DNA of 63,923 bases, the filler included, from Octopus bimaculoides (Eukaryota), in assembly GCF_001194135.2 (NCBI RefSeq). It is 4 parts of 4 records of this genome, joined end to end, with 100 filler letters (N's around TTAATTAATTAA, not from the genome) between each part and the next. Parts side by side here need not be neighbours in the genome. Positions count along the whole stretch, not along the records: positions 51,778 to 61,409 come from NC_068981.1; 3 more parts are not named here. One strand, 5' to 3'. Below the pieces are notes generated by a model, which saw only the letters and a list, made by a program, of their open reading frames with translations, was not told the DNA's origin and did no database searches. The first letter of the stretch is position 1. The number at the start of each line of letters is the position of its first letter. Positions 8,395 through 61,409 of the stretch are shown piece by piece. Both the position numbers and the translations under genes were made by a program.

Positions 8395-8603
8395 GTGTGT
8401 CTGTGTTTGTCCCCCCACCATCGCTTGACAACCGATGGTGGTGTGTTTACGTCCCCGTAACTTAGCGGTTCGGCAAAAAGAGACCGATAGAGTAAGTACT
8501 AGGCTTACAAAGAATAAGTCCTGGGTCGATTAGCTCGACTAAAGGCGGTGCTCCAGCATGGCCACAGTCAAATGACTGAAAGAAGTAAAAGAGTAAAAGA
8601 GTA
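8395..8603 (+). mobile_element. Family B SINE, 3' half (CpG intact)
   Basis: gtccccccaccatcgcttgacaaccgat...ggtgctccagcatggcc..agtcaaatgactgaaa and (aagagta)n tail; near-identical to other copies. Confidence 0.9.
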
Positions 8604-11778: not shown

Positions 11779-11985
11779 CACGACGGACGAAATGCTTAGC
11801 GGTATTTCGTCTGCCACTACGTTCTAAGTTCAAATTCCGCCGAGGTCGACTTAGGCTTTCCTTCTTTTCGGGGTCGATTAAATAGGTCCCAGTTACGCAC
11901 TGGGGTCGATGTAATCGACCTAATCCCTTTGTCTGTCCTTGTTTTTCCCCTCTATGTTTAGCCCCCTGTGGGCAATAAAAATATA
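11779..11985 (+). mobile_element. Meta-domain-like tRNA-SINE (family A)
   Basis: gaaatgcttagcgg..gttcaaattccgccgaggtcgac..ggggtcgat.aaata.gt.ccag core, repeated many times in the window. Confidence 0.9.
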
Positions 11986-51777: not shown

Positions 51778-51788
51778 ATTTTTATTAA

Positions 51789-52260
51789 GGCAGTGAGCTG
51801 GCAGAGTCATTAGCATGCCAGAATCTTTAGCATTAAGGCGGCGAGCTGGCAGAAATGTAAGCACGCCGGGCGAAATGCTTAGCGGTATTTCGTCTGCCGT
51901 TACGTTCTGAGTTCAAATTCCTCCGAGGTCGACTTTGCCTTTCATCCTTTCAGGGTCGATTAAATAAGTACCAGTTACGCACTGGGGTCGATATAATTGA
52001 CTTAATCCGTTTGGCTGTCCTTGTTTGTCCCCTCTGTGTGTAGCCCCTTGTGGGCAGTAAAGAAATAAGAATCATTAGCATGCCATACAAAATATTTAGC
52101 AACATTTCTTCTGTCTTTACTTTCTGAGTTCAAATATCATCAAGGTTGACTTAGCCTTTCCTCCTTTCGGGGTTGATTAAATAAGTACCTGTTGAGCACT
52201 GAGGCTGATGTAATCGACTAGCCCTCTTCCCCAATACTTGATGACTTGTGCCCATAGTAG
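51789..52260 (+). mobile_element. Young family A SINE (51837-52068) nested in an old CpG-decayed family A SINE
   Basis: Inner copy keeps its CpGs; flanking duplication gaatctttagcat (51821-51833) / gaatcattagcat (52069-52081). Confidence 0.85.
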
Positions 52261-52398
52261 AAAGGATCATCATCATCAGCAGCATCAATATTATTAATGC
52301 AATGAGCTGGCAGAATCATTGCTGTGCCGGGCAAAATGCTTAGCAGCATTTTAACTATCTACATGTTCTGAGTTCAAATTCAGATTACTATTATTATT

Positions 52399-52768
52399 AT
52401 TACCCCTGCTTTAGTAAAGGCAGAGGTATTGTTTTCAGTTGTGTTTGTTTGTTTGTCCAAGGACAAGATATCTCAAGAACTGCTCGATGGATTCAGATGA
52501 AATTTTCAGGTGTGTTTGTCCTTGTGACTGGCACGAACTGATTAGATTTTGGGATCGATTCAGTATGGGACAAGGATTCTGGATTATTTTTCCTGTTTTT
52601 TTACTTAATTTTTGAGAGTGGTTGGGTTCATCTTTAGTATTCTTGTTTGTGAGAGCAGTCGAGTTTATTTCAGACATTCTCATTTAAAAAATCATCTCTG
52701 GCTAATCGTTGAGAGGACATTGGTGTTGCCTTGGCGGAGGTTTGCACTCTCTGAGTGCTCTTGCTATT
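52399..52768 (+). mobile_element. Helentron-associated (HINE/DINE-like) non-autonomous element
   Basis: 3' end ccttggcggaggt followed by hairpin gcactc-tct-gagtgc (52744-52758); degenerate 5' counterpart acccctgctttag; T-rich flanks. Confidence 0.65.
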
Positions 52769-52777
52769 ATTATTATT

Positions 52778-52998
52778 AAGGTGGTGAGCTGACAGAATTG
52801 TTGGCATGCTAGGCAAAATGCTTAGCAGCATTTCGTTTGTCTTCATGTCCTGAGTTCAAATTCTGCCAAGGTTGACTTTGCTTTTCATCATTTTGGGGTC
52901 AATAAAATAAGTACCAGTTGAACCCTGGGGTTGATGTAATCAACTAATCCCCTCCCCCAAAATTGCTGCCTTTGTGGCAAAATTTGAAACCATGATCA

Positions 52999-53050
<52 letters not shown>

Positions 53051-53235
53051 GGTAGTGAGCTGGCAGAATTGTTAGCATGCCAGGAAAAATGCTTAGTGGC
53101 ATTTTGTCAGTCTTTATGATCTGAGTTCAAATCCTACTAAGGTTGAAATAAGTACCAGTTGCATACTGGGGTCCATATAATTGACTAGCCCTTCCCTCAA
53201 AATTTCAGGCCTTGTGCCTATAGTAGAAAGGATTA
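52778..53235 (+). mobile_element. Two CpG-decayed family A SINEs
   Basis: ggtggtgagctg..gccaaggttgact..ggggtcaat: CG to TG/CA changes throughout. Confidence 0.88.
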
Positions 53236-53496
53236 TTATTATTATTATTATTATTATGATTATTATTATTATTATTATTGTAGTTGTTGTTCTTGTTGTC
53301 GTTGTTTGCCATGTCTACTTGTGGAAGAACTCCACATACAAAGGATTTTTTTCCAGGATTATTTGATGAAAAAATTATTCTGTTCTTTCCTCCAACAATG
53401 AGCTTAACAATATATAAACAGAGCAGTAAGTGGCAGTAAACATTACTTCTCGGTATAGTTACTGCTTTCATCTCTTATAGAGATTTTCTAACTAAC

Positions 53497-53766
53497 CAGT
53501 TTGCTTTGTTGCAAGGTCAGTGACTGTGTCACTTGGTTTTCTAGATATTGTGAGCTGCAGTGAACTACTGCTATCTCTAGCAGATGAGTATCCACCACTG
53601 AGAATGACCACAAAGAGGTCGAAGCTGTACAGTCTGGTAGTCTCATGGCTGGAAGGTGGTAGGGGTTTACTCCCCTGCTTGCAATATATATCAGGTGCAG
53701 ATTGCATTAAGTAACAAGCTGGAGGAGGCATCATCCTAGGGTTAAAAATAGCAGTAATGTTGGTTC
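53497..53766 (-). CDS. Candidate symmetric phase 1-1 internal exon (270 nt), unknown protein
   Basis: ctgttctgtag| acceptor, G|gttagt donor; only one minus frame is open (GTNITAIFNPRMMPPPACY...RKPSDTVTDLATKQT); lies in the CpG-decayed block. Confidence 0.45.
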
Positions 53767-53924
53767 CTACAGAACAGCCAAGTTTAAGTGGTAGTCAACT
53801 TTACTTCTCAATATTTAAACGTCCATCCCATTAATACATGTTTAAATAATCCATATCACTTTGTTAGCGAAAATAATACCTGGATGGAAATAAAGGTTTG
53901 CTCTTTGACAGTTGGTGTACTATA

Positions 53925-54080
53925 CAGACATGGTCGTGTGGTTAAGAAGCTTGCTTTCCACCCAAGTGGTCTTGGGTTCAGTTCCTCTGTGTGGTACCTT
54001 GGGCAAGTGTTAGCACCCCAGGCTGAGCAAAGCTTTGTGAGTTGGTTTGGTAGATAGAAACTGAAAGAAGCCTATATCAT
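53925..54080 (+). mobile_element. Family B SINE head, CpG-decayed
   Basis: gtggttaagaagcttgctttcc..ggtaccttgggcaagtg.. Confidence 0.85.
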
Positions 54081-54129
54081 CATCATCATCATCATCATTA
54101 TCATCATCGTCATCATTATCATCATCATT

Positions 54130-54345
54130 GTTTAATGTCCTTCTTCCATGCTAGCATGGGTTGGACAGTTTAACATAAGCCAACCAGGTCTTCTACTACA
54201 CCAGGCTACTGTGTCTGTTTTGACATGGTTTTTATGGCTGGATGCCCTTCCTAACACCAACCACTCTGCAGAGTGGACTGAGTGCTTTTTATATGGCACC
54301 AGCACAGGCAAGGTCAGTTTTGACATGGTTTTTACAGCTGGATAC
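54130..54345 (-). mobile_element. RTE-type 3' tail element with (GAT)n tail
   Basis: Reverse complement reads ggttggtgttaggaagggcatccagccataaaaaccatg; adjacent (CAT)n run. Confidence 0.7.
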
Positions 54346-54349
54346 AAGC

Positions 54350-54600
54350 AGCTTTGTGGTTAGGATGTCTGCACTCATGATTGTGATGTCATGGTTTTGA
54401 TTCCCGGATCAGCTGTGTGTTGTGTTCATGAGCAAAACACTGCTGCAGTTCACTCAGCTATAAATGGACAACCCTGTGATGGACTGGTGTTCTGTTCAGG
54501 GGAAATGTTGGCTTGCCTACCTAGCCTGTAGGTAACATCATTTGAAAACTAAAGGATATTGTAACCAGTGGTGTATAGCAACGTTTGATAGTCTGATCAA
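54350..54600 (+). mobile_element. tRNA-SINE with the shared C/D domain and a V-domain-like 3' module
   Basis: gtgttgtgttcatgagcaaaacact..cactcagctataaatgg then ctgtgatggactgg..ctgttcagggg. Confidence 0.65.
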
Positions 54601-54619
54601 TACCATGATACCTTGGTAT

Positions 54620-54878
54620 ATATATTCTTTTATTCTTTTACTTGTTTCAGTCGTTTGACTGTGGCCATGCTGGAGCACTGCCATGAAGGGTTTTAGTGAA
54701 ACAAATCGATCCTAGGACTTATTTCTTAAGCCTAATATCTAATCTATCAGTCTGTTTTGCTGAACTGCTAAGTTACGGTAACATAACACACCAACACCAC
54801 TTGTCAAACTATGATGGCAGGAACAAACACAGACATAAAGACACAGACACACAGATATATATACATACACACACACAT

Positions 54879-54900
<22 letters not shown>
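54620..54900 (-). mobile_element. Family B SINE, 3' half, CpG-decayed
   Basis: ttactt gtttcagtc..tgactgtggccatgctggagcac..gctgaactgctaagttacgg. Confidence 0.85.
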
Positions 54901-54933
<33 letters not shown>

Positions 54934-55236
54934 NNNNNNNNNNNNNNNNNNNNNNNNNNNNNNNNNNNNNNNNNNNNNNNNNNNNNNNNNNNNNNNNNNN
55001 NNNNNNNNNNNNNNNNNNNNNNNNNNNNNNNNNNNNNNNNNNNNNNNNNNNNNNNNNNNNNNNNNNNNNNNNNNNNNNNNNNNNNNNNNNNNNNNNNNNN
55101 NNNNNNNNNNNNNNNNNNNNNNNNNNNNNNNNNNNNNNNNNNNNNNNNNNNNNNNNNNNNNNNNNNNNNNNNNNNNNNNNNNNNNNNNNNNNNNNNNNNN
55201 NNNNNNNNNNNNNNNNNNNNNNNNNNNNNNNNNNNN

Positions 55237-55288
<52 letters not shown>

Positions 55289-55309
55289 ATGACCAACCAG
55301 ACTATCAGA

Positions 55310-55775
55310 TGTTACACATCATTGGTCACAATGTGCTTTGCATTGTTTTAGCCTTTGAATTATGCTGCCCCAGTAGCTAAGTGAGCAGGCCAACATTCCT
55401 TCCTGATTGAAAGGGGGACTAAAGCGATGTAAAAGGAAGTGCTTTGCTCAAGAACTCAATGCACCACCCAGTCTGGAAATTGAACCTGGATCTAGTGATT
55501 ATGAGCGTAACAACCTAACCACTCAGCCACATGCATTCTTGGATGTGTGTGTGTCTGTGTCTGTGTTGTGTTTGTTCCCCAGTGCCACTTGACAACCAGT
55601 TTTAGTTTATGTCCCCATAACTTAGCAGTTTGGCAAAAAGGATCACTAGAATATGTAGCATCCTTAAAAAACAAAAACAAAAGAAGTATTGGGGAGTAAA
55701 TTTGTTCAGCTAAACCCTTCAAAGTAGTCTCCAGCATGGCTGCAGTTTAGAACTGAAACGAGTGAAAAGGAAAAA
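55310..55775. mobile_element. C/D-type SINE (minus, 55310-55535) abutting a family B 3' half (plus, 55545-55775), both CpG-decayed
   Basis: gtgctttgctcaagaactcaa and gtccccataacttagcagtttggcaaaa. Confidence 0.75.
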
Positions 55776-56679
55776 AAAATAGAAAGGAAATTATATTCCA
55801 GAAAATATCCAGTTACTTTGTTTGCGACTGATTCAATATCACTAAGTGCTAATCACAGTAGTGGTAACATCCTACCAGTTTTGCAAATACAAAAAACTGT
55901 GAACAATAGGAAAGCTGAAAAATATGGCAACTGAGCAAAAATACAGTTATAAATACAGTTACTGAGAAGCACAGAATGAAAATAAGCATTGACAATGAAA
56001 ACTTAAATGATAATAACAAAAGTACCATCATTGCTCCCACCGCCAACAACAATGCTACCAAGGAGTATTATTAGTTTGAAATAAATTCTACAGTCGGGGT
56101 AAATGCTGTTAGACAAGCCTATCCAATGAAACGATTCTGCATGTACTTTCTCAGTGGCTGGGTATTGCTAACTTTGTGAAGTTATATCAAGCAGCTGTTC
56201 ACCACATGTGGGATGAATCTGGCTATCAGTTGAATCTGTTGTAATGGTTGCCCCACTGTCTTCCATTAACATGGGCAAGAAAGGCAGTTTTCCTTTGTAT
56301 GGTGGCTATAGTGAAAGAGGTTGTGTGATGGAGAAAGTCGAAAGGTCTGATGACAGACAATCACCTCTTTGGTCAAGCCCTCATTGATATTTTCAAGTTT
56401 CACTTGAAAAGGAAGGTGATTGGGAGCGGGAGCTGCTGTCCTCAAGTGAATTTATTGAAAGGTGGATGTGAAAAAGACAAAAGTGGGTGAGACCCTTCTA
56501 AGTACATGTCTGTAGGTCAGGGAATATCAAATGAGACAGGCACCTATTCTTGATGTTCAGAGTGAACTTAGGTCTGTGGGTTTCCTCAATTGGCCTTAGG
56601 CGGAAGTCTGCCTGCACCAGGAGGTTTGCATCATCCTCATTTATTTGTATACCATGTTTACTTTATATTTCACATCTGT

Positions 56680-57260
56680 TGAGGTCAACTTTGTGTTTTG
56701 TCCTTTTGGGGTTGATAAAATAAGTAGCAGTTGAACACTGGGGTTATTATAATCGACTTACCTCCTGTCCTAAAATCGCTGTCCTTGTGCCAAAAGTTGA
56801 AACCATTATTATTCTTATAAATGCTTAGTGGCATTTCTTTTGTCTTTATGTTCTGAGTTCAAATTCCGCTGAGGTTGACTTTGCCTTTCATTCTTTTGGG
56901 AGTTGATGAAATAAGTACTAGTTGTGCACTGGAGTCAATGTAATCATCTAGCTTCCTCCCAAAATTTCAGGCCCTTGTGTCTATAGTAGAAAGGATTGTT
57001 GCTGTTGTTTCCAGTAGTAGTAGTAGCAATAGTAGTGCAGTAGTAGTAGTAATGGTGGTGGTGGTGGTGTGGCAGAACCATTGGATTGTGAGATTTAATG
57101 CTATATTGCATTTAATCTTGTTGTTCTACATTCTGAATTCAAATCTTGCCAAAGTTGAATTTCCTCAACTCTTCCTTCTTCAAGCATTGATAAAGTAAAT
57201 ATGAGTCATGTACTGAGGCCAATTCAGTCAACTAAAGCCTGCCCTAGAAATTTGTGATAG
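56680..57260 (+). mobile_element. Three CpG-decayed family A SINE copies
   Basis: gaggtcaactttg, gaggttgactttgcc and gccaaagttgaatttcc cores. Confidence 0.82.
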
Positions 57261-57279
57261 TCATTGTTGTCAGTGCAAG

Positions 57280-57342
<63 letters not shown>

Positions 57343-57344
57343 TT

Positions 57345-57860
57345 TGTATCTATTTTTCCATGCTTGCACAGGTCTCCTTCATTTCAGTTTCACACCATTT
57401 ATTGCAGTCCATTGTCATCTTCTTCACAAGGCTGAACCTCTTAAGATTATCTTTCAGTATGTCTTCCCATATTTTTCTTGGTCTTCCTCTCTTGCAGGTT
57501 TCATTCACCTATACTGCTCTGTACTTCTTTATCCAACTGCCATCTTCCTTACACACCACACATCTGTACCAACTCCTCTCCTGTACACTACATCTGATAT
57601 CTCTTACACCTAATTTTTCATTCAGCTTGTTTGTACTACATTCTTCCTGCAAACAAACATTATACATCTAGGGCAATATACTCTCCTCATTTCTTTCCAG
57701 CCTTTACTGGAATCTTCTACATTCACTGCCCATGTTTTGTTACTATGTAACAGTACACTTCATACACAAGTACCAGACAATCTGTCCTTTAATCATCACA
57801 GAATCCCTTTATAGCCAGCAAAAGTAAAAGCTCCCTGAACACCTTTCATCCCATTCTTAC
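57345..57860 (-). mobile_element. RTE-clade LINE 3' remnant with (GAT)n tail
   Basis: Minus peptide EKLGVRDIRCSVQER..WY followed by a degenerate GRP.KTW-like region; (CAT)n at 57280-57342. Confidence 0.75.
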
Positions 57861-57867
57861 TCTACTA

Positions 57868-58200
57868 AAGGGGTTCTCAATCATTTTTCTTATCTATGGA
57901 CCCCTTTGATTATTATTTTATTCTGGTGGACCCCCATAGCTGTTCAATGTTTAAAAACTAGTTTTATAGAAACTTCTTCCAAAATTCCTATTTCGTTTCT
58001 CACACATTAACTTGTGTAGGTTGAACCATGTAAAATGTTAGAGAAAAAAAACCTAGCTGTTTCTTGCAACATATACCAATACATACATCTAAAGTAAAAT
58101 CTTTTCAGGGGCCCTTAAAATACTACTGTGGATCCCCAATTTACTATTTTGTTGCATGGACTCCCAAAATTCTTATATGGACTCCAGTTGAGAACCATTG
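57868..58200 (+). mobile_element. hAT/Charlie-type MITE, about 333 bp
   Basis: TIRs (c)aggggttctcaa / ttgagaaccattg; 8-bp TSD ctctacta / ctcttcta (7 of 8); second copy at 23380-23700. Confidence 0.9.
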
Positions 58201-58469
58201 CTCTTCTATGTTTTTGGAACATTCTCATCCATCACTAATTAGTTCAATAAAGAACATTAACAGCTTATGTGAAATAAAACAGCAACACTGTTTTCCTAAT
58301 ATTTATTAAAAAAATACTTTTAAGCAGACACCATCACATTTTAGTTATCGAAGGGTAGGGGAGGCACTCCTCTTTGAGAAAAAAGCCTGTAATCTATACA
58401 CCTTATACAATAAGTATAATAATAGGAGAGTATTGTAGTTCGCTTGAAGCATTGTGTATTGTTTGTAAG

Positions 58470-58697
58470 GAATAAAAAGTTTAGAATGGTACAACAATGC
58501 ACTATAAAACAAAAAATGGACTATATACCTGTTGTAATTTGGTTATCTATAGTCCGATGATATTTCGGAATTACAATTCCTTAGAAGGAATTGTAATTCC
58601 GAAATATCATCGGACTATAGATAACCAAATCACAACAGGTATATAGTCCATTTTTTGTTCTATAGTGCATTGTTGTACCATTCTAAACTTTTTATTC
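58470..58697. repeat. Near-perfect palindrome, 113-bp arms, 2-4-nt loop
   Basis: 58470-58582 vs reverse complement of 58585-58697, 2 mismatches. Confidence 0.97.
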
Positions 58698-58799
58698 TTT
58701 ACAAGTATTATAATATTTTGTTTCGATAAATAAATAGGGTCTTTCATATTTTTTTGCTGTTCCATCATTAAGATATATTATCAAATATAATCATAGTCA

Positions 58800-59280
58800 T
58801 CATCATCATTATCATTTTGTATCTATTTTTCCATGCTTGCGCAGAAAATATCAAATATTACTAAGGAATTTTCTGAGAATTTTGGAAGAATTTATTTCAT
58901 AGGTGCTCTTACTGATAAATACTCCAATGCATCAGCTGCATATCAAGTCACTCTTCTCAATCAGCCTGCCTGTGATCCCTTTGCCCCTGTTTTGTTTACA
59001 TTAAGTTCATCACATGGAATTCCTACATACTCTCTTACTATATAGTGAACAAAGTCACTTTGTTGTAGAGTCCTGTCATCTCTCTTTTTGATTAAAACTA
59101 CTTTTTGCTAGGATTACTGTAAGACCTCTTGATTCCAGGTTTTTACTTCTACATTCTTTTATTCTTTTATTCTTTTATATGTTTCAGCCCTGAAATTATT
59201 CTCTGATTCATTGGTAGATTCAGCTAAAACTAAGTCATCGGCATACAGAAATTTTCACAGACATCCAATCTTAATAGTAG
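58800..59280 (-). mobile_element. RTE-clade LINE RT fragments
   Basis: Minus peptides FLYADDLVLAES (about 59250-59215) and NLESRGL.V.LAK. Confidence 0.75.
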
Positions 59281-59603
59281 TAGTAGTAGTAGTAATAGTT
59301 GTAGTAGTAGTTGTTGTAGTAGTAGTAGTTGTAATAATGTTGCTTAATATCAGCATATATTGTAGAGAGCCAAGTTAAATACTTTATAGTATTCAGTTTA
59401 GTACCATCTAGTGATTTCAAATTCTATCACATTTGATTCTGTCTTGCATTCCTCTGAGAATGAAGAAAATAAGTATCTCTTATACATTGTAATTGATTTA
59501 ATCAACTATGTCTTCATACACAAAAAACTGGTTTTGTTCTTCTTGGGAAAGAAATCTTCATTGTAACATTTAATTAAGCCTCTCTGTATATTGATTTTTC
59601 ATG

Positions 59604-59639
<36 letters not shown>

Positions 59640-59640
59640 T

Positions 59641-59673
<33 letters not shown>

Positions 59674-60769
59674 TTTTCTCTCTCTCTCACACACACACAA
59701 ATACACATGATCTGAGATAAAGAACATTAGCAGCTTATGTGAAATGAAACTACAAGATCTGATAATCAAAACTGGTTTGTTGAGTTGGCTTACAAGAATT
59801 TTGTCCGTTTTGCTCATAATTTAGAACATTTGATAATATATTAGGATATTTCAATGATGGAACAGCAAGAAAATATGAAAGACCCTATTTATTTATTGAA
59901 ACAAAATATTATAATACTTATTGTATATGGTGTATAGATTACAGGCTTTTTTTCTCAAAGAGGAGAGACCCCCCCTCCCCTTCGATAACTAAAATGTGAT
60001 GGTCTCTGCTTAAAAGTATTTTTTAATAAACATTAGGAAAACAGTGTTGCTGTTTTATTTCACATAAGCTGCTAATGTTCTTTATCTCAAACCTTATGTG
60101 TGTGTGCAAGAAAAATCAATATATAGACAGACTTAATTAAATGTTATAATGAAGATTTCTTTCATAGGAACTAGACCAATTTTTTTCTGTATGAGGACAT
60201 AGTTGATTAAATCAACTACAATGTATAAGAGATACTTATTTTGTTCATGCTCAGAGGAAAGCAAAACAAGATCAACTGTGATATAATTTGAAATCACCAT
60301 ATTATAAAGCATTTAAGTTGGCTCTCTATCAATTGTTAAGACTAGCTGTCTGTGAAAATTTCTGTATACTGTCTACAAGCAAATTTGCCTTGCATTCATC
60401 CACAGTTGATAAAATAAGTACCAGACATATGCTGGGGGATAAATTATATCAACTATACTTGTACTCTACAGATTAAGTAAGAAATCTATATTAACCTGCT
60501 TAGGAGTATTCCTGGCTCACTGGGAATTTCATATTTGACACATTGCCAAATTCCCAATATAGCAGGAATTGGCAAGCCCCATGTTAAAATCCGGTCAAAT
60601 TAAATATAGATTGGCTAGTCTGAATAAAGATAGATTGTCAGCCTAAAATTAGGATGTTTACAAATGTCGGCTCTTAAATTGTATTATTTTAGGTGTTTTT
60701 ATGTGTAGTGTTTCCAATTTTTCAACCATGAAGAATCACTACAGCCTAATACTTATTGTTTGGTTACAA

Positions 60770-61010
60770 CACACAAGCATACGTTGTTTCACATTGCCCC
60801 AGTTCTGTCAGTTGGCAAAAGTGATTTGTACCTGTAATTCAAAAGGGCCAGCCATGTCACATTCTGTGTCACACTGAATCTCCCTAAGAACTACGTTAAG
60901 GGTGTGTGTGTCTGTGGAGTGCTCAGCCACTTGTACGTTAATTTCTTGAGCAAGCTGTTCCATTGATTGAACCAACTGGAATCCTCGTTGTCATAACTGA
61001 CAGAGTGCCA
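60770..61010 (+). mobile_element. Family D SINE, CpG-decayed
   Basis: aagaactacgttaaggg..gtctgtggagtgctcagccactt; homologous to 26215-26487. Confidence 0.85.
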
Positions 61011-61229
61011 GTTATCATAATCTTCTTCCACGCTCAAATGGTGTTTTTTTACGTGCCACCTGCACAGGAGTCACACATATTTATAATAATGCATAAACTA
61101 TAGGAAAGGCGTGATCCAACAGGAACAGTAGTCCAACAGGAACAGTAATCCAATGTAACAAAAGATTCCGGCAGTTGGGTACTCCAAATCCAGTTGAAAG
61201 GCCAGGGTCTGTGTGAGCGTACGTCATAT

Positions 61230-61409
61230 AAGTTCAAAAAAACACAAAAAACAATAACAAAAAAGTGAGAACGTGATACGGATAGTGTTATTGGACGCTC
61301 GGGAAAGGAAAGAGAGAGAGTATGACGTTTCGGGTGGAGCCCTTCGTCGGAAAGATGGAAAGTTCAAAGAATGGAAAAACGGAGGAAGAGAAAATTGGCA
61401 CCGATGCCC
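61230..61409 (-). mobile_element. Penelope-like terminal fragment with hammerhead-like motif at 61321-61354
   Basis: Minus strand CCGACGA-A-GGG-cucca-CCC-GAAA-CGUC; truncated by the gap. Confidence 0.65.

What the first reader, a model, noticed from the sequence alone, without database searches (positions are those of the whole stretch)
52070..61000. Sharply bounded CpG-decayed block: fossil of germline methylation, probably a gene body
Seen: SINE copies outside the block keep CpGs (ccgaggtcgac..ggggtcgat at 11838), whereas copies of the same families inside show CG to TG/CA changes (ccaaggttgac..ggggtcaat at 52866; gtccccataacttagcagtttgg at 55611 vs gtccccgtaacttagcggttcgg at 8451). Established: many invertebrates methylate gene bodies in a mosaic pattern. 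Inference: this block is intronic DNA of a methylated gene. Caveat: the block nearly coincides with one contig bounded by spacer gaps, so a misjoin is possible.
Basis: partly seen in the sequence, partly recalled or inferred. Interest (0 to 1): 0.7.

Follow-up and report, generated by a model that had tools for sequence, protein, structure and literature searches.

The report
CpG-decayed repeat-rich noncoding tract
About 8.8 kb of old, transposon-filled non-coding animal DNA (probably octopus) has lost about four fifths of its CpG sites in the way germline methylation causes; this is real but an ordinary, already described feature, and its "sharp edges" are a young SINE insertion and the ends of a short scaffold.

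Summary
The CpG depletion is real. Positions 52063-60900 have CpG o/e 0.19 (51 CpGs in 8535 nt). GpC is about 1.0, and TpG (1.26) and CpA (1.37) are in excess. Nine older copies of one SINE family keep 2 of 94 ancestral CpGs. About 55% retention is expected from their 26% non-CpG divergence. So the copies are older, but CpGs decayed 6-11 times faster than other sites, which is the methylation signature.

The "sharp boundary" is not a domain edge. The left edge at 52063 is the 3' end of a CpG-intact young SINE (51826-52062), and decayed DNA continues on its other side (51778-51825). Elsewhere the boundary is the scaffold end. The right-hand 400 nt (61011-61409, o/e 0.93) is unexplained.

No exon, ORF, Pfam domain or RNA gene was found, so "gene body" is plausible but untested. 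It rests on the published Octopus bimaculoides methylome. The gap sits in a TA microsatellite between convergent SINE tails.

Verdict: an ordinary instance of a known phenomenon, of low interest.

The parts
51778..51825 (+). 5' fragment of an old SINE-A copy (A0), cut by the piece's edge. All 4 alignable ancestral CpG sites are decayed (2 TG, 2 CA).
51826..52062 (+). CpG-intact, presumably young SINE-A copy (A1): 15 CpGs, o/e 1.08. Its 3' end creates the apparent left boundary of the block.
52063..60900 (.). The CpG-decayed tract: 51 CpGs in 8535 nt, o/e 0.19, TpG 1.26, CpA 1.37.
52066..52395 (+). Old SINE-A copies A2 and A3 (5' half), head to tail. CpG retained 0/14 and 1/9; non-CpG divergence from A1 is 28-29%.
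52396..52766 (.). Unclassified element between SINE copies, with intermediate CpG content (o/e 0.45, 6 CpGs).
52767..53232 (+). Old SINE-A copies A4 and A5, separated and followed by (ATT)16 tails. CpG retained 1/14 and 0/13, at only 14-18% non-CpG divergence.
54342..54858 (+). tRNA-like SINE family D copy (54342-54595) followed by a family B copy (54623-54858) whose (CA)n(AT)n tail runs into the gap. CpG o/e 0.25.
54934..55236 (.). Assembly gap inside a TA microsatellite: (AT)21 at 54891-54933 and (TA)24 at 55237-55285.
55298..55781 (-). Family D copy (55298-55536, 71% to the left copy) and family B copy (55543-55781, 76%) on the minus strand. CpG o/e 0.11-0.17.
56640..57262 (+). Old SINE-A copies A6, A7 and A8, head to tail. 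CpG retained 0/8, 0/11 and 0/12.
57280..57830 (-). Decayed 3' end of a non-LTR retrotransposon with an (ATG)21 tail (CAT on +). The translation ends ...GRPRKIWEDILKDNLKRF... and is 48% identical over 82 aa to the unnamed protein P0003, with one internal stop. No CpGs in 57343-57830.
58247..58776 (.). Partial copy of an inverted-repeat element carrying a 291-nt insert (58412-58702). The insert includes a near-perfect 242-nt palindrome (58463-58704). CpG o/e is 0.78 over 58425-58702, most of the insert.
59406..60302 (.). Element with long inverted arms (88-90% identical) and an internal (CT)42. AT-rich and almost CpG-free.
60701..61010 (+). Decayed repeat (family C, which I recall as the 3' part of an octopus SINE). 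CpG o/e 0.29.
   Evidence: the family assignment is from memory, not tested
61011..61409 (.). CpG-normal right end (16 CpGs, o/e 0.93; last 210 nt 1.31) of unknown nature. It contains a 17-nt tandem repeat at 61114-61153, and the piece's edge cuts it.

Best explanation
The tract is old, transposon-dense non-coding DNA, probably from an octopus genome. It appears to have stayed methylated at CpG in the germline for tens of millions of years. Deamination of 5-methylcytosine then turned CpG into TpG or CpA several times faster than other sites changed, in the repeat copies and in the sequence between them. Elements that inserted later still hold most of their CpGs because they have had little time to decay: the SINE at 51826-52062, the palindromic insert at 58412-58702, and perhaps 61011-61409. 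The apparent sharp edges are the end of one such young insert and the ends of a short scaffold. They are not chromatin-domain borders. Short-read contigs tend to break at young high-copy repeats, which would explain why the decayed block nearly coincides with a contig.

Shown: the depletion, its direction, its excess over age, and the nature of the left edge. Inferred: that methylation is the cause. Also inferred, and only by analogy with the published octopus methylome, is that the methylated compartment is an intron of a broadly expressed gene.
For: CpG o/e is 0.19 against GpC of about 1.0, with TpG 1.26 and CpA 1.37. All sub-segments from 52063 to 61010 are depleted, on both sides of the gap.

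In SINE-A, 2 of 94 ancestral CpGs are kept, against 55% expected from 25.8% non-CpG divergence (binomial P about 1e-29). At the 8 sites where both TG and CA occur among copies, which proves independent decay after insertion, 0 of 54 are kept. Copies with only 14-18% non-CpG divergence have already lost 26 of 27 CpGs. Against the family majority consensus, non-CpG change is about 15%, which gives roughly 11-fold hypermutability.

CpG content falls with apparent element age inside the piece: 1.08, 0.78, 0.45, then 0-0.29.

Published context (PMC9476566): O. bimaculoides has 80.66 million CpGs counted on both strands and fewer than 10% of them methylated. [quoted passage not shown] From that count and a 2.0-2.7 Gb genome at 36% GC, the genome-average CpG o/e is about 0.45-0.6. 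The tract is therefore 2-3 times more depleted than average.
Against: There is no exon, ORF, Pfam domain or RNA gene in the piece. A 41-aa frame at the right end has no homologue. Complementary substitutions in the SINE copies show no significant strand asymmetry, so there is no sign of transcription.

The organism is identified only from my memory of the SINE sequences and a matching GC content; no database here holds the genome. No other locus could be sampled, so I could not show that equally old copies elsewhere keep their CpGs. The genome-average o/e uses an approximate genome size. The methylome data are from brain and hatchling, not germline.
Confidence: 0.6

Rival explanations
1. Age plus genome-wide CpG hypermutability. 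All sufficiently old DNA in this genome has lost its CpGs, through past or low-level global germline methylation. The tract is then simply an old stretch with few recent insertions, not a special compartment and not necessarily genic.
For: The decayed copies are 14-36% diverged at non-CpG sites from the intact copy. That is the typical age of O. bimaculoides TEs, whose Kimura peak is 16-17% (PMC6279123). Young inserts inside the tract keep their CpGs. No other locus could be examined, and published methylomes are somatic.
Against: The genome-average CpG o/e is estimated at 0.45-0.6, although most TEs are of similar age. TEs are reported as CpG-dense and essentially unmethylated (PMC9476566).
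Confidence: 0.25
2. Repeat-targeted methylation. The tract was methylated because it is a dense TE cluster, as a heterochromatin or silencing target, and not because it lies in a transcribed gene.
For: The tract is almost wholly repeat-derived. PMC9476566 reports somewhat higher methylation in intergenic repeats than in repeat-free intergenic DNA, and higher still in satellites.
Against: [quoted passage not shown] The CpG-intact SINE and the palindromic insert sit inside the cluster undecayed, although that may only reflect their youth.
Confidence: 0.1
3. Artefact. The block is a chimeric or misjoined scaffold, or the contrast only reflects pasting unrelated pieces together.
For: The scan program states the window was joined from unrelated pieces. 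The piece has an internal 303-N gap and is only 9.6 kb long.
Against: The depletion lies inside continuous sequence on both sides of the gap (0.21 and 0.13). The gap lies in a TA microsatellite with the same repeat families on both flanks. A misjoin would not create CpG-to-TpG/CpA decay. Only the 'boundary' part of the finding is artefactual.
Confidence: 0.03

Closest known systems
CpG depletion of historically germline-methylated gene bodies in mosaic-methylated invertebrates (Ciona, honeybee and oyster from my own knowledge; O. bimaculoides methylome, Macchi et al. 2022, PMC9476566)
   Same: Low CpG o/e with TpG/CpA excess over kilobases, in a genome whose average is much less depleted. Published octopus methylation is concentrated in the bodies of about 14,000 genes.
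   Different: No gene, exon or transcript is shown for this tract, and no methylation data were available. The domain edges seen here are insertion and scaffold edges, not gene borders.
Age-dependent CpG decay of SINE copies in methylated genomes (for example Alu in primates, where CpG sites mutate roughly 6-10 times faster; from my own knowledge)
   Same: Young copies are CpG-rich, and old copies show independent CG to TG/CA changes. The 6-11 fold excess rate estimated here is of the same order.
   Different: In vertebrates this happens genome-wide. In an octopus-type genome it should be restricted to the methylated minority of the genome.
Octopus SINE/LINE repeat landscape (PMC6279123, PMC13282606)
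   Same: There are dense SINE and LINE fragments with microsatellite tails. Divergence is typical of the 16-17% Kimura peak, and GC is 36.6% against 36.3% reported for O. minor.
   Different: The family assignments were made by eye and from memory. No repeat library or genome was available to confirm them.

Membership tests
Historically germline-methylated domain (CpG-decay signature) | CpG o/e strongly below the same-composition control and below the genome average | tested here: met
   CpG o/e is 0.19 against GpC 1.02. The genome average is estimated at 0.45-0.6 from PMC9476566 and an approximate genome size; that comparison assumes the piece is octopus.
Historically germline-methylated domain (CpG-decay signature) | Reciprocal excess of the deamination products TpG and CpA | tested here: met
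   TpG is 1.26 and CpA 1.37 over 52063-60900. 66 of 94 ancestral SINE CpGs are now TG, CA or TA.
Historically germline-methylated domain (CpG-decay signature) | CpG loss exceeds what overall sequence age predicts (CpG-specific hypermutability) | tested here: met
   2 of 94 CpGs are retained against 55% expected. 0 of 54 are retained at sites with proven independent decay. The rate ratio is about 6 against the young copy and about 11 against the majority consensus.
Historically germline-methylated domain (CpG-decay signature) | Cytosines actually methylated in germ cells | not testable with these tools
   No bisulfite or nanopore data were available, and the genome is not in any searchable collection.
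Gene body (intron) of a methylated, transcribed gene | Lies between exons of an annotated or expressed gene | tested here: inconclusive
   There is no ORF above 135 aa. Six-frame Pfam scans of about two thirds of the piece found nothing; the SINE clusters at 51778-53279 and 56701-57336, and the plus frames right of 57337, were not scanned. The right-end frame has no homologue. A 9.6-kb piece of a long intron would look the same.
Gene body (intron) of a methylated, transcribed gene | Transcription-associated strand asymmetry of substitutions | tested here: inconclusive
   A>G 13 against T>C 25, and C>T 33 against G>A 25, at non-CpG sites. TG 34 against CA 22 at CpG sites (p = 0.14). There are too few events, and all copies share one orientation.
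Gene body (intron) of a methylated, transcribed gene | Edges of the depleted domain coincide with gene borders (TSS or TTS) | tested here: not met
   The left edge is the end of a young SINE, with decayed DNA on both sides of it. The right edge is 400 nt from the scaffold end and uncharacterised.
SINE (family A of this piece) | Short, non-coding, multi-copy, with a simple-repeat tail | tested here: met
   There are 10 copies or fragments, the full-length ones about 190-240 nt. All are on the plus strand, have (ATT)n or (ATC)n tails, and contain no ORF.
SINE (family A of this piece) | Recognisable tRNA-, 5S- or 7SL-derived head | tested here: not met
   ARAGORN finds no tRNA-like gene, and Rfam gives no tRNA, 5S or 7SL hit at E up to 1. 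This may reflect decay, or a head that these tools do not model.

The most novel reading that the evidence does not exclude
The step at about 61010, from CpG o/e of 0.29 or less to 0.93-1.31 in DNA that matches no other repeat in the piece, could be a true edge of a methylated domain. It might be an unmethylated promoter or TSS: an ATG at 61354 in a good initiation context is open to the piece's end. The scaffold would then capture a cephalopod methylation-domain boundary at base resolution. The age-graded inserts inside the tract could also date how long the domain has been methylated.
Probability: 0.12. Interest if true: 0.3.

Novelty: already known. Interest (0 to 1): 0.13.

Why it matters
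It matters little on its own. CpG decay as a record of past germline methylation is textbook, and the octopus methylome (gene-body methylation, unmethylated CpG-dense TEs) is published.

The useful points are methodological. First, in a scan of concatenated scaffolds, a "sharp" compositional boundary should be checked against insert and contig ends. Second, comparing CpG loss with non-CpG divergence in nested SINE copies separates "just older" from "methylated". Third, run genome-wide, that same comparison would give a cheap map of long-term germline methylation in cephalopods, for which no germline methylomes were found here.

Tried and rejected
1. Fetching the source genome or other copies for a background all failed. 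Exact-protein look-ups of two window ORFs found nothing on record. Word-indexed protein searches with a SINE frame, the LINE tail and the right-end frame gave no hits. Degenerate SINE patterns against metagenome, viral and prokaryote-genome contigs gave 0 matches. Searching SINE strings in the paper library gave 0 papers.

2. I tried a local in-situ mutation spectrum from inverted duplicate arms: the palindrome, 58247-58776 against 59846-60085, and 59406-59755 against 60047-60302. Only 1 of 44 arm differences touches a CpG, because these AT-rich elements hold almost no CpGs. The test is uninformative.

3. Strand asymmetry as a proxy for transcription was not significant.

4. Exon or domain search: the ORF list covered the whole piece, and six-frame Pfam scans covered about two thirds of it. 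Only low-complexity noise appeared.

5. Rfam gave only sub-gathering miRNA-model hits on the perfect palindrome (best 62.6 bits against a threshold of 135). I rejected these as generic hairpin matches.

6. I considered whether A0 plus A2 is one old SINE split by A1 with a target-site duplication. The flanks share about 30 nt but with too many differences for a young insertion, so this stays unresolved (by eye).

7. Non-methylation causes of CpG depletion (AT pressure, context bias) were rejected. GpC is normal, and the loss runs specifically to TG and CA.
Full report
**Material.** Only 51778-61409 (9632 nt, of which 303 are N) is real sequence; the rest of the window is masked. The piece is 36.6% GC. 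It has no ORF above 135 aa once frames that read across the N gap are set aside, and no tRNA gene. Six-frame Pfam scans of about two thirds of it found no domain; the SINE clusters at 51778-53279 and 56701-57336, and the plus frames right of 57337, were not scanned. It is a mosaic of interspersed repeats and microsatellites.

**The gap.** The gap at 54934-55236 is flanked by (AT)21 on the left and (TA)24 on the right. To the left lie a tRNA-like SINE (family D, 54342-54595) and a second family (B, 54623-54858), whose (CA)n(AT)n tail runs into the gap. To the right, on the minus strand, lie copies of the same two families (D 55298-55536, 71% identical; B 55543-55781, 76%), and the D copy's (TA)n tail abuts the gap. 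CpG o/e is equally low on both sides, 0.21 and 0.13. The gap is thus most simply an unspanned TA microsatellite within one locus, although continuity cannot be proven here. Nothing coding crosses it.

- Over 52063-60900 there are 51 CpGs in 8535 nt. That gives o/e 0.19, with TpG 1.26 and CpA 1.37. GpC, the same-composition control, is 1.02 over the whole piece.
- Every sub-segment I defined between 52063 and 61010 is depleted (o/e 0-0.45), including stretches with no repeat recognised within the piece.

**Simply older, or CpG-specific decay?** The piece holds one CpG-intact copy of SINE family A (A1, 51826-52062; 15 CpGs, o/e 1.08) and nine older copies or fragments, all on the plus strand. 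Results with A1 as proxy for the ancestral sequence:
- The older copies differ at 14-36% of non-CpG sites (pooled 25.8%, JC distance 0.32), so they really are much older.
- They retain only 2 of 94 ancestral CpGs, where (1-0.258)^2 = 55% is expected if CpG sites behaved like others (P about 1e-29). 66 of the 94 are now TG, CA or TA.
- Some A1 CpGs may be subfamily differences; column 79 is CT in all old copies. I therefore restricted the count to the 8 sites where both TG and CA occur among copies, which proves independent decay after insertion. There, 0 of 54 cells keep CG.
- Copies A4 and A5, only 14-18% diverged, have already lost 26 of 27 CpGs.
- Against the family majority consensus, non-CpG change is about 15%.
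- The CpG-specific rate excess is therefore about 6-fold to 11-fold, the order seen for methylated CpGs in vertebrate SINEs (my knowledge).

Age alone does not explain the loss. Methylation-type hypermutability does.

**Are the boundaries real?** No, or not shown.
- The step at about 52063 is the 3' end of A1.
- The 48 nt on A1's other side (51778-51825) is a further decayed SINE-A fragment, with 4 of 4 sites lost. A CpG-intact element is thus sitting inside decayed DNA.
- Other CpG-richer islands in the tract are also discrete elements. The palindromic insert is absent from its sister copy (o/e 0.78 over 58425-58702). An unclassified element at 52396-52766 has o/e 0.45.
- CpG content therefore falls with apparent element age, as expected for ongoing decay in place.
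- The right-hand 400 nt (61011-61409) has o/e 0.93, rising to 1.31 in the last 210 nt. It matches nothing else in the piece, and a 41-aa frame running off the edge has no homologue. It may be a young repeat or a truly unmethylated segment; I cannot tell.
- Short-read contigs usually end in young high-copy repeats. This gives a simple reason (inference) why the decayed block nearly fills a contig.

**What is it?** I recognise the SINE families as octopus repeats from memory only. GC content matches published octopus genomes (36.3% in O. minor, PMC6279123). No collection available here contains the genome.

If it is octopus, the published methylome applies (PMC9476566):
- There are 80.66 million CpGs counted on both strands, and fewer than 10% are methylated.
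- Methylation is concentrated in the bodies of about 14,000 mostly broadly expressed genes.
- TEs and intergenic DNA are largely unmethylated and CpG-dense.

From that count and a 2.0-2.7 Gb genome, the average CpG o/e is about 0.45-0.6, or 1.5-2.0 CpGs per 100 nt. The tract has 0.19 and 0.6 per 100 nt. Most O. bimaculoides TEs are 16-17% diverged, the same age class as the copies here, yet the genome keeps 2-3 times more CpG.

That makes a long-term methylated compartment, most likely an intron, the best reading. But it is an argument by analogy. No exon or transcript evidence exists in the piece, and substitution strand asymmetry is not significant. The main rival is that all old DNA in this genome decays alike. 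It could not be excluded because no second locus could be sampled.

**Other anatomy.** 57343-57830 on the minus strand is the decayed 3' end of a non-LTR retrotransposon with an (ATG)21 tail. Its last 52 codons gave four weak hits among 1.84 billion representatives (best E 8.7e-5), three of them at the C-terminal end of the hit protein. An 86-aa translation is 48% identical over 82 aa to one of them, with one internal stop. That the hits are retrotransposon ORF2 tails is my reading of their sequences; Pfam names none of them.

**Verdict.** The CpG decay is real and carries the methylation signature. The sharp bounding comes from a young insertion and from scaffold ends. The gene-body assignment is plausible but untested. 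The phenomenon is well known in general and published for octopus, so novelty and interest are low.

Noticed in passing
window 58412-58704: A near-perfect 242-nt palindrome (arms 58463-58582 and 58585-58704, 117/120 complementary; DNA fold -125.7 kcal/mol, z = -28.9) lies inside a 291-nt insert. The insert is absent from the inverted sister copy at 59846-60085 and is flanked by AAGTATAATAATA and AAGTATTATAATA, which look like a target-site duplication. It could be a foldback or MITE-type insertion, and it is CpG-richer than its surroundings. Rfam miRNA-model hits there are all below gathering.
   Followed up: partly
window 59406-60302 and 58247-58776: An approximately 900-nt element has long inverted arms (59406-59755 against 60047-60302, 88-90% identical), with a (CT)42 run inside the left arm. 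A 95-97% identical partial copy lies 1.1 kb upstream in the opposite orientation. It looks like a non-autonomous TIR transposon family or a local inverted duplication.
   Followed up: partly
window 51778-52395, 52767-53232, 56640-57262, 60340-60470: All ten SINE-A copies or fragments are on the plus strand. They sit in head-to-tail clusters joined by (ATT)n or (ATC)n microsatellites. This suggests repeated insertion into the tails of earlier copies rather than an orientation bias imposed by a host gene.
   Followed up: no
window 57280-57830 (minus strand) and 58787-58844: This is the decayed C-terminal coding end of a non-LTR retrotransposon (...GRPRKIWEDILKDNLKRF...) with an (ATG)21 tail. Its last 45 nt or so plus tail recur at 58787-58844 (91% identical). 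A related tail motif follows the (ATC)n run at 54076-54160.
   Followed up: partly
window 61011-61409: The CpG-normal end of the piece (o/e 0.93) holds a 17-nt tandem repeat (61114-61153, 2.4 copies) and an A-rich run (about 61236-61270). An ATG at 61354 in an A-at-minus-3, G-at-plus-4 context is open to the piece's edge. A protein search found no homologue. It could be a young repeat or an unmethylated segment.
   Followed up: partly
window 53920-54030, 54342-54595, 55298-55536: Three tRNA-like SINE heads (for example ...gtggttaag...gggttcagttcc...) are visible by eye, but ARAGORN and Rfam do not call them, presumably because of decay.
   Followed up: no
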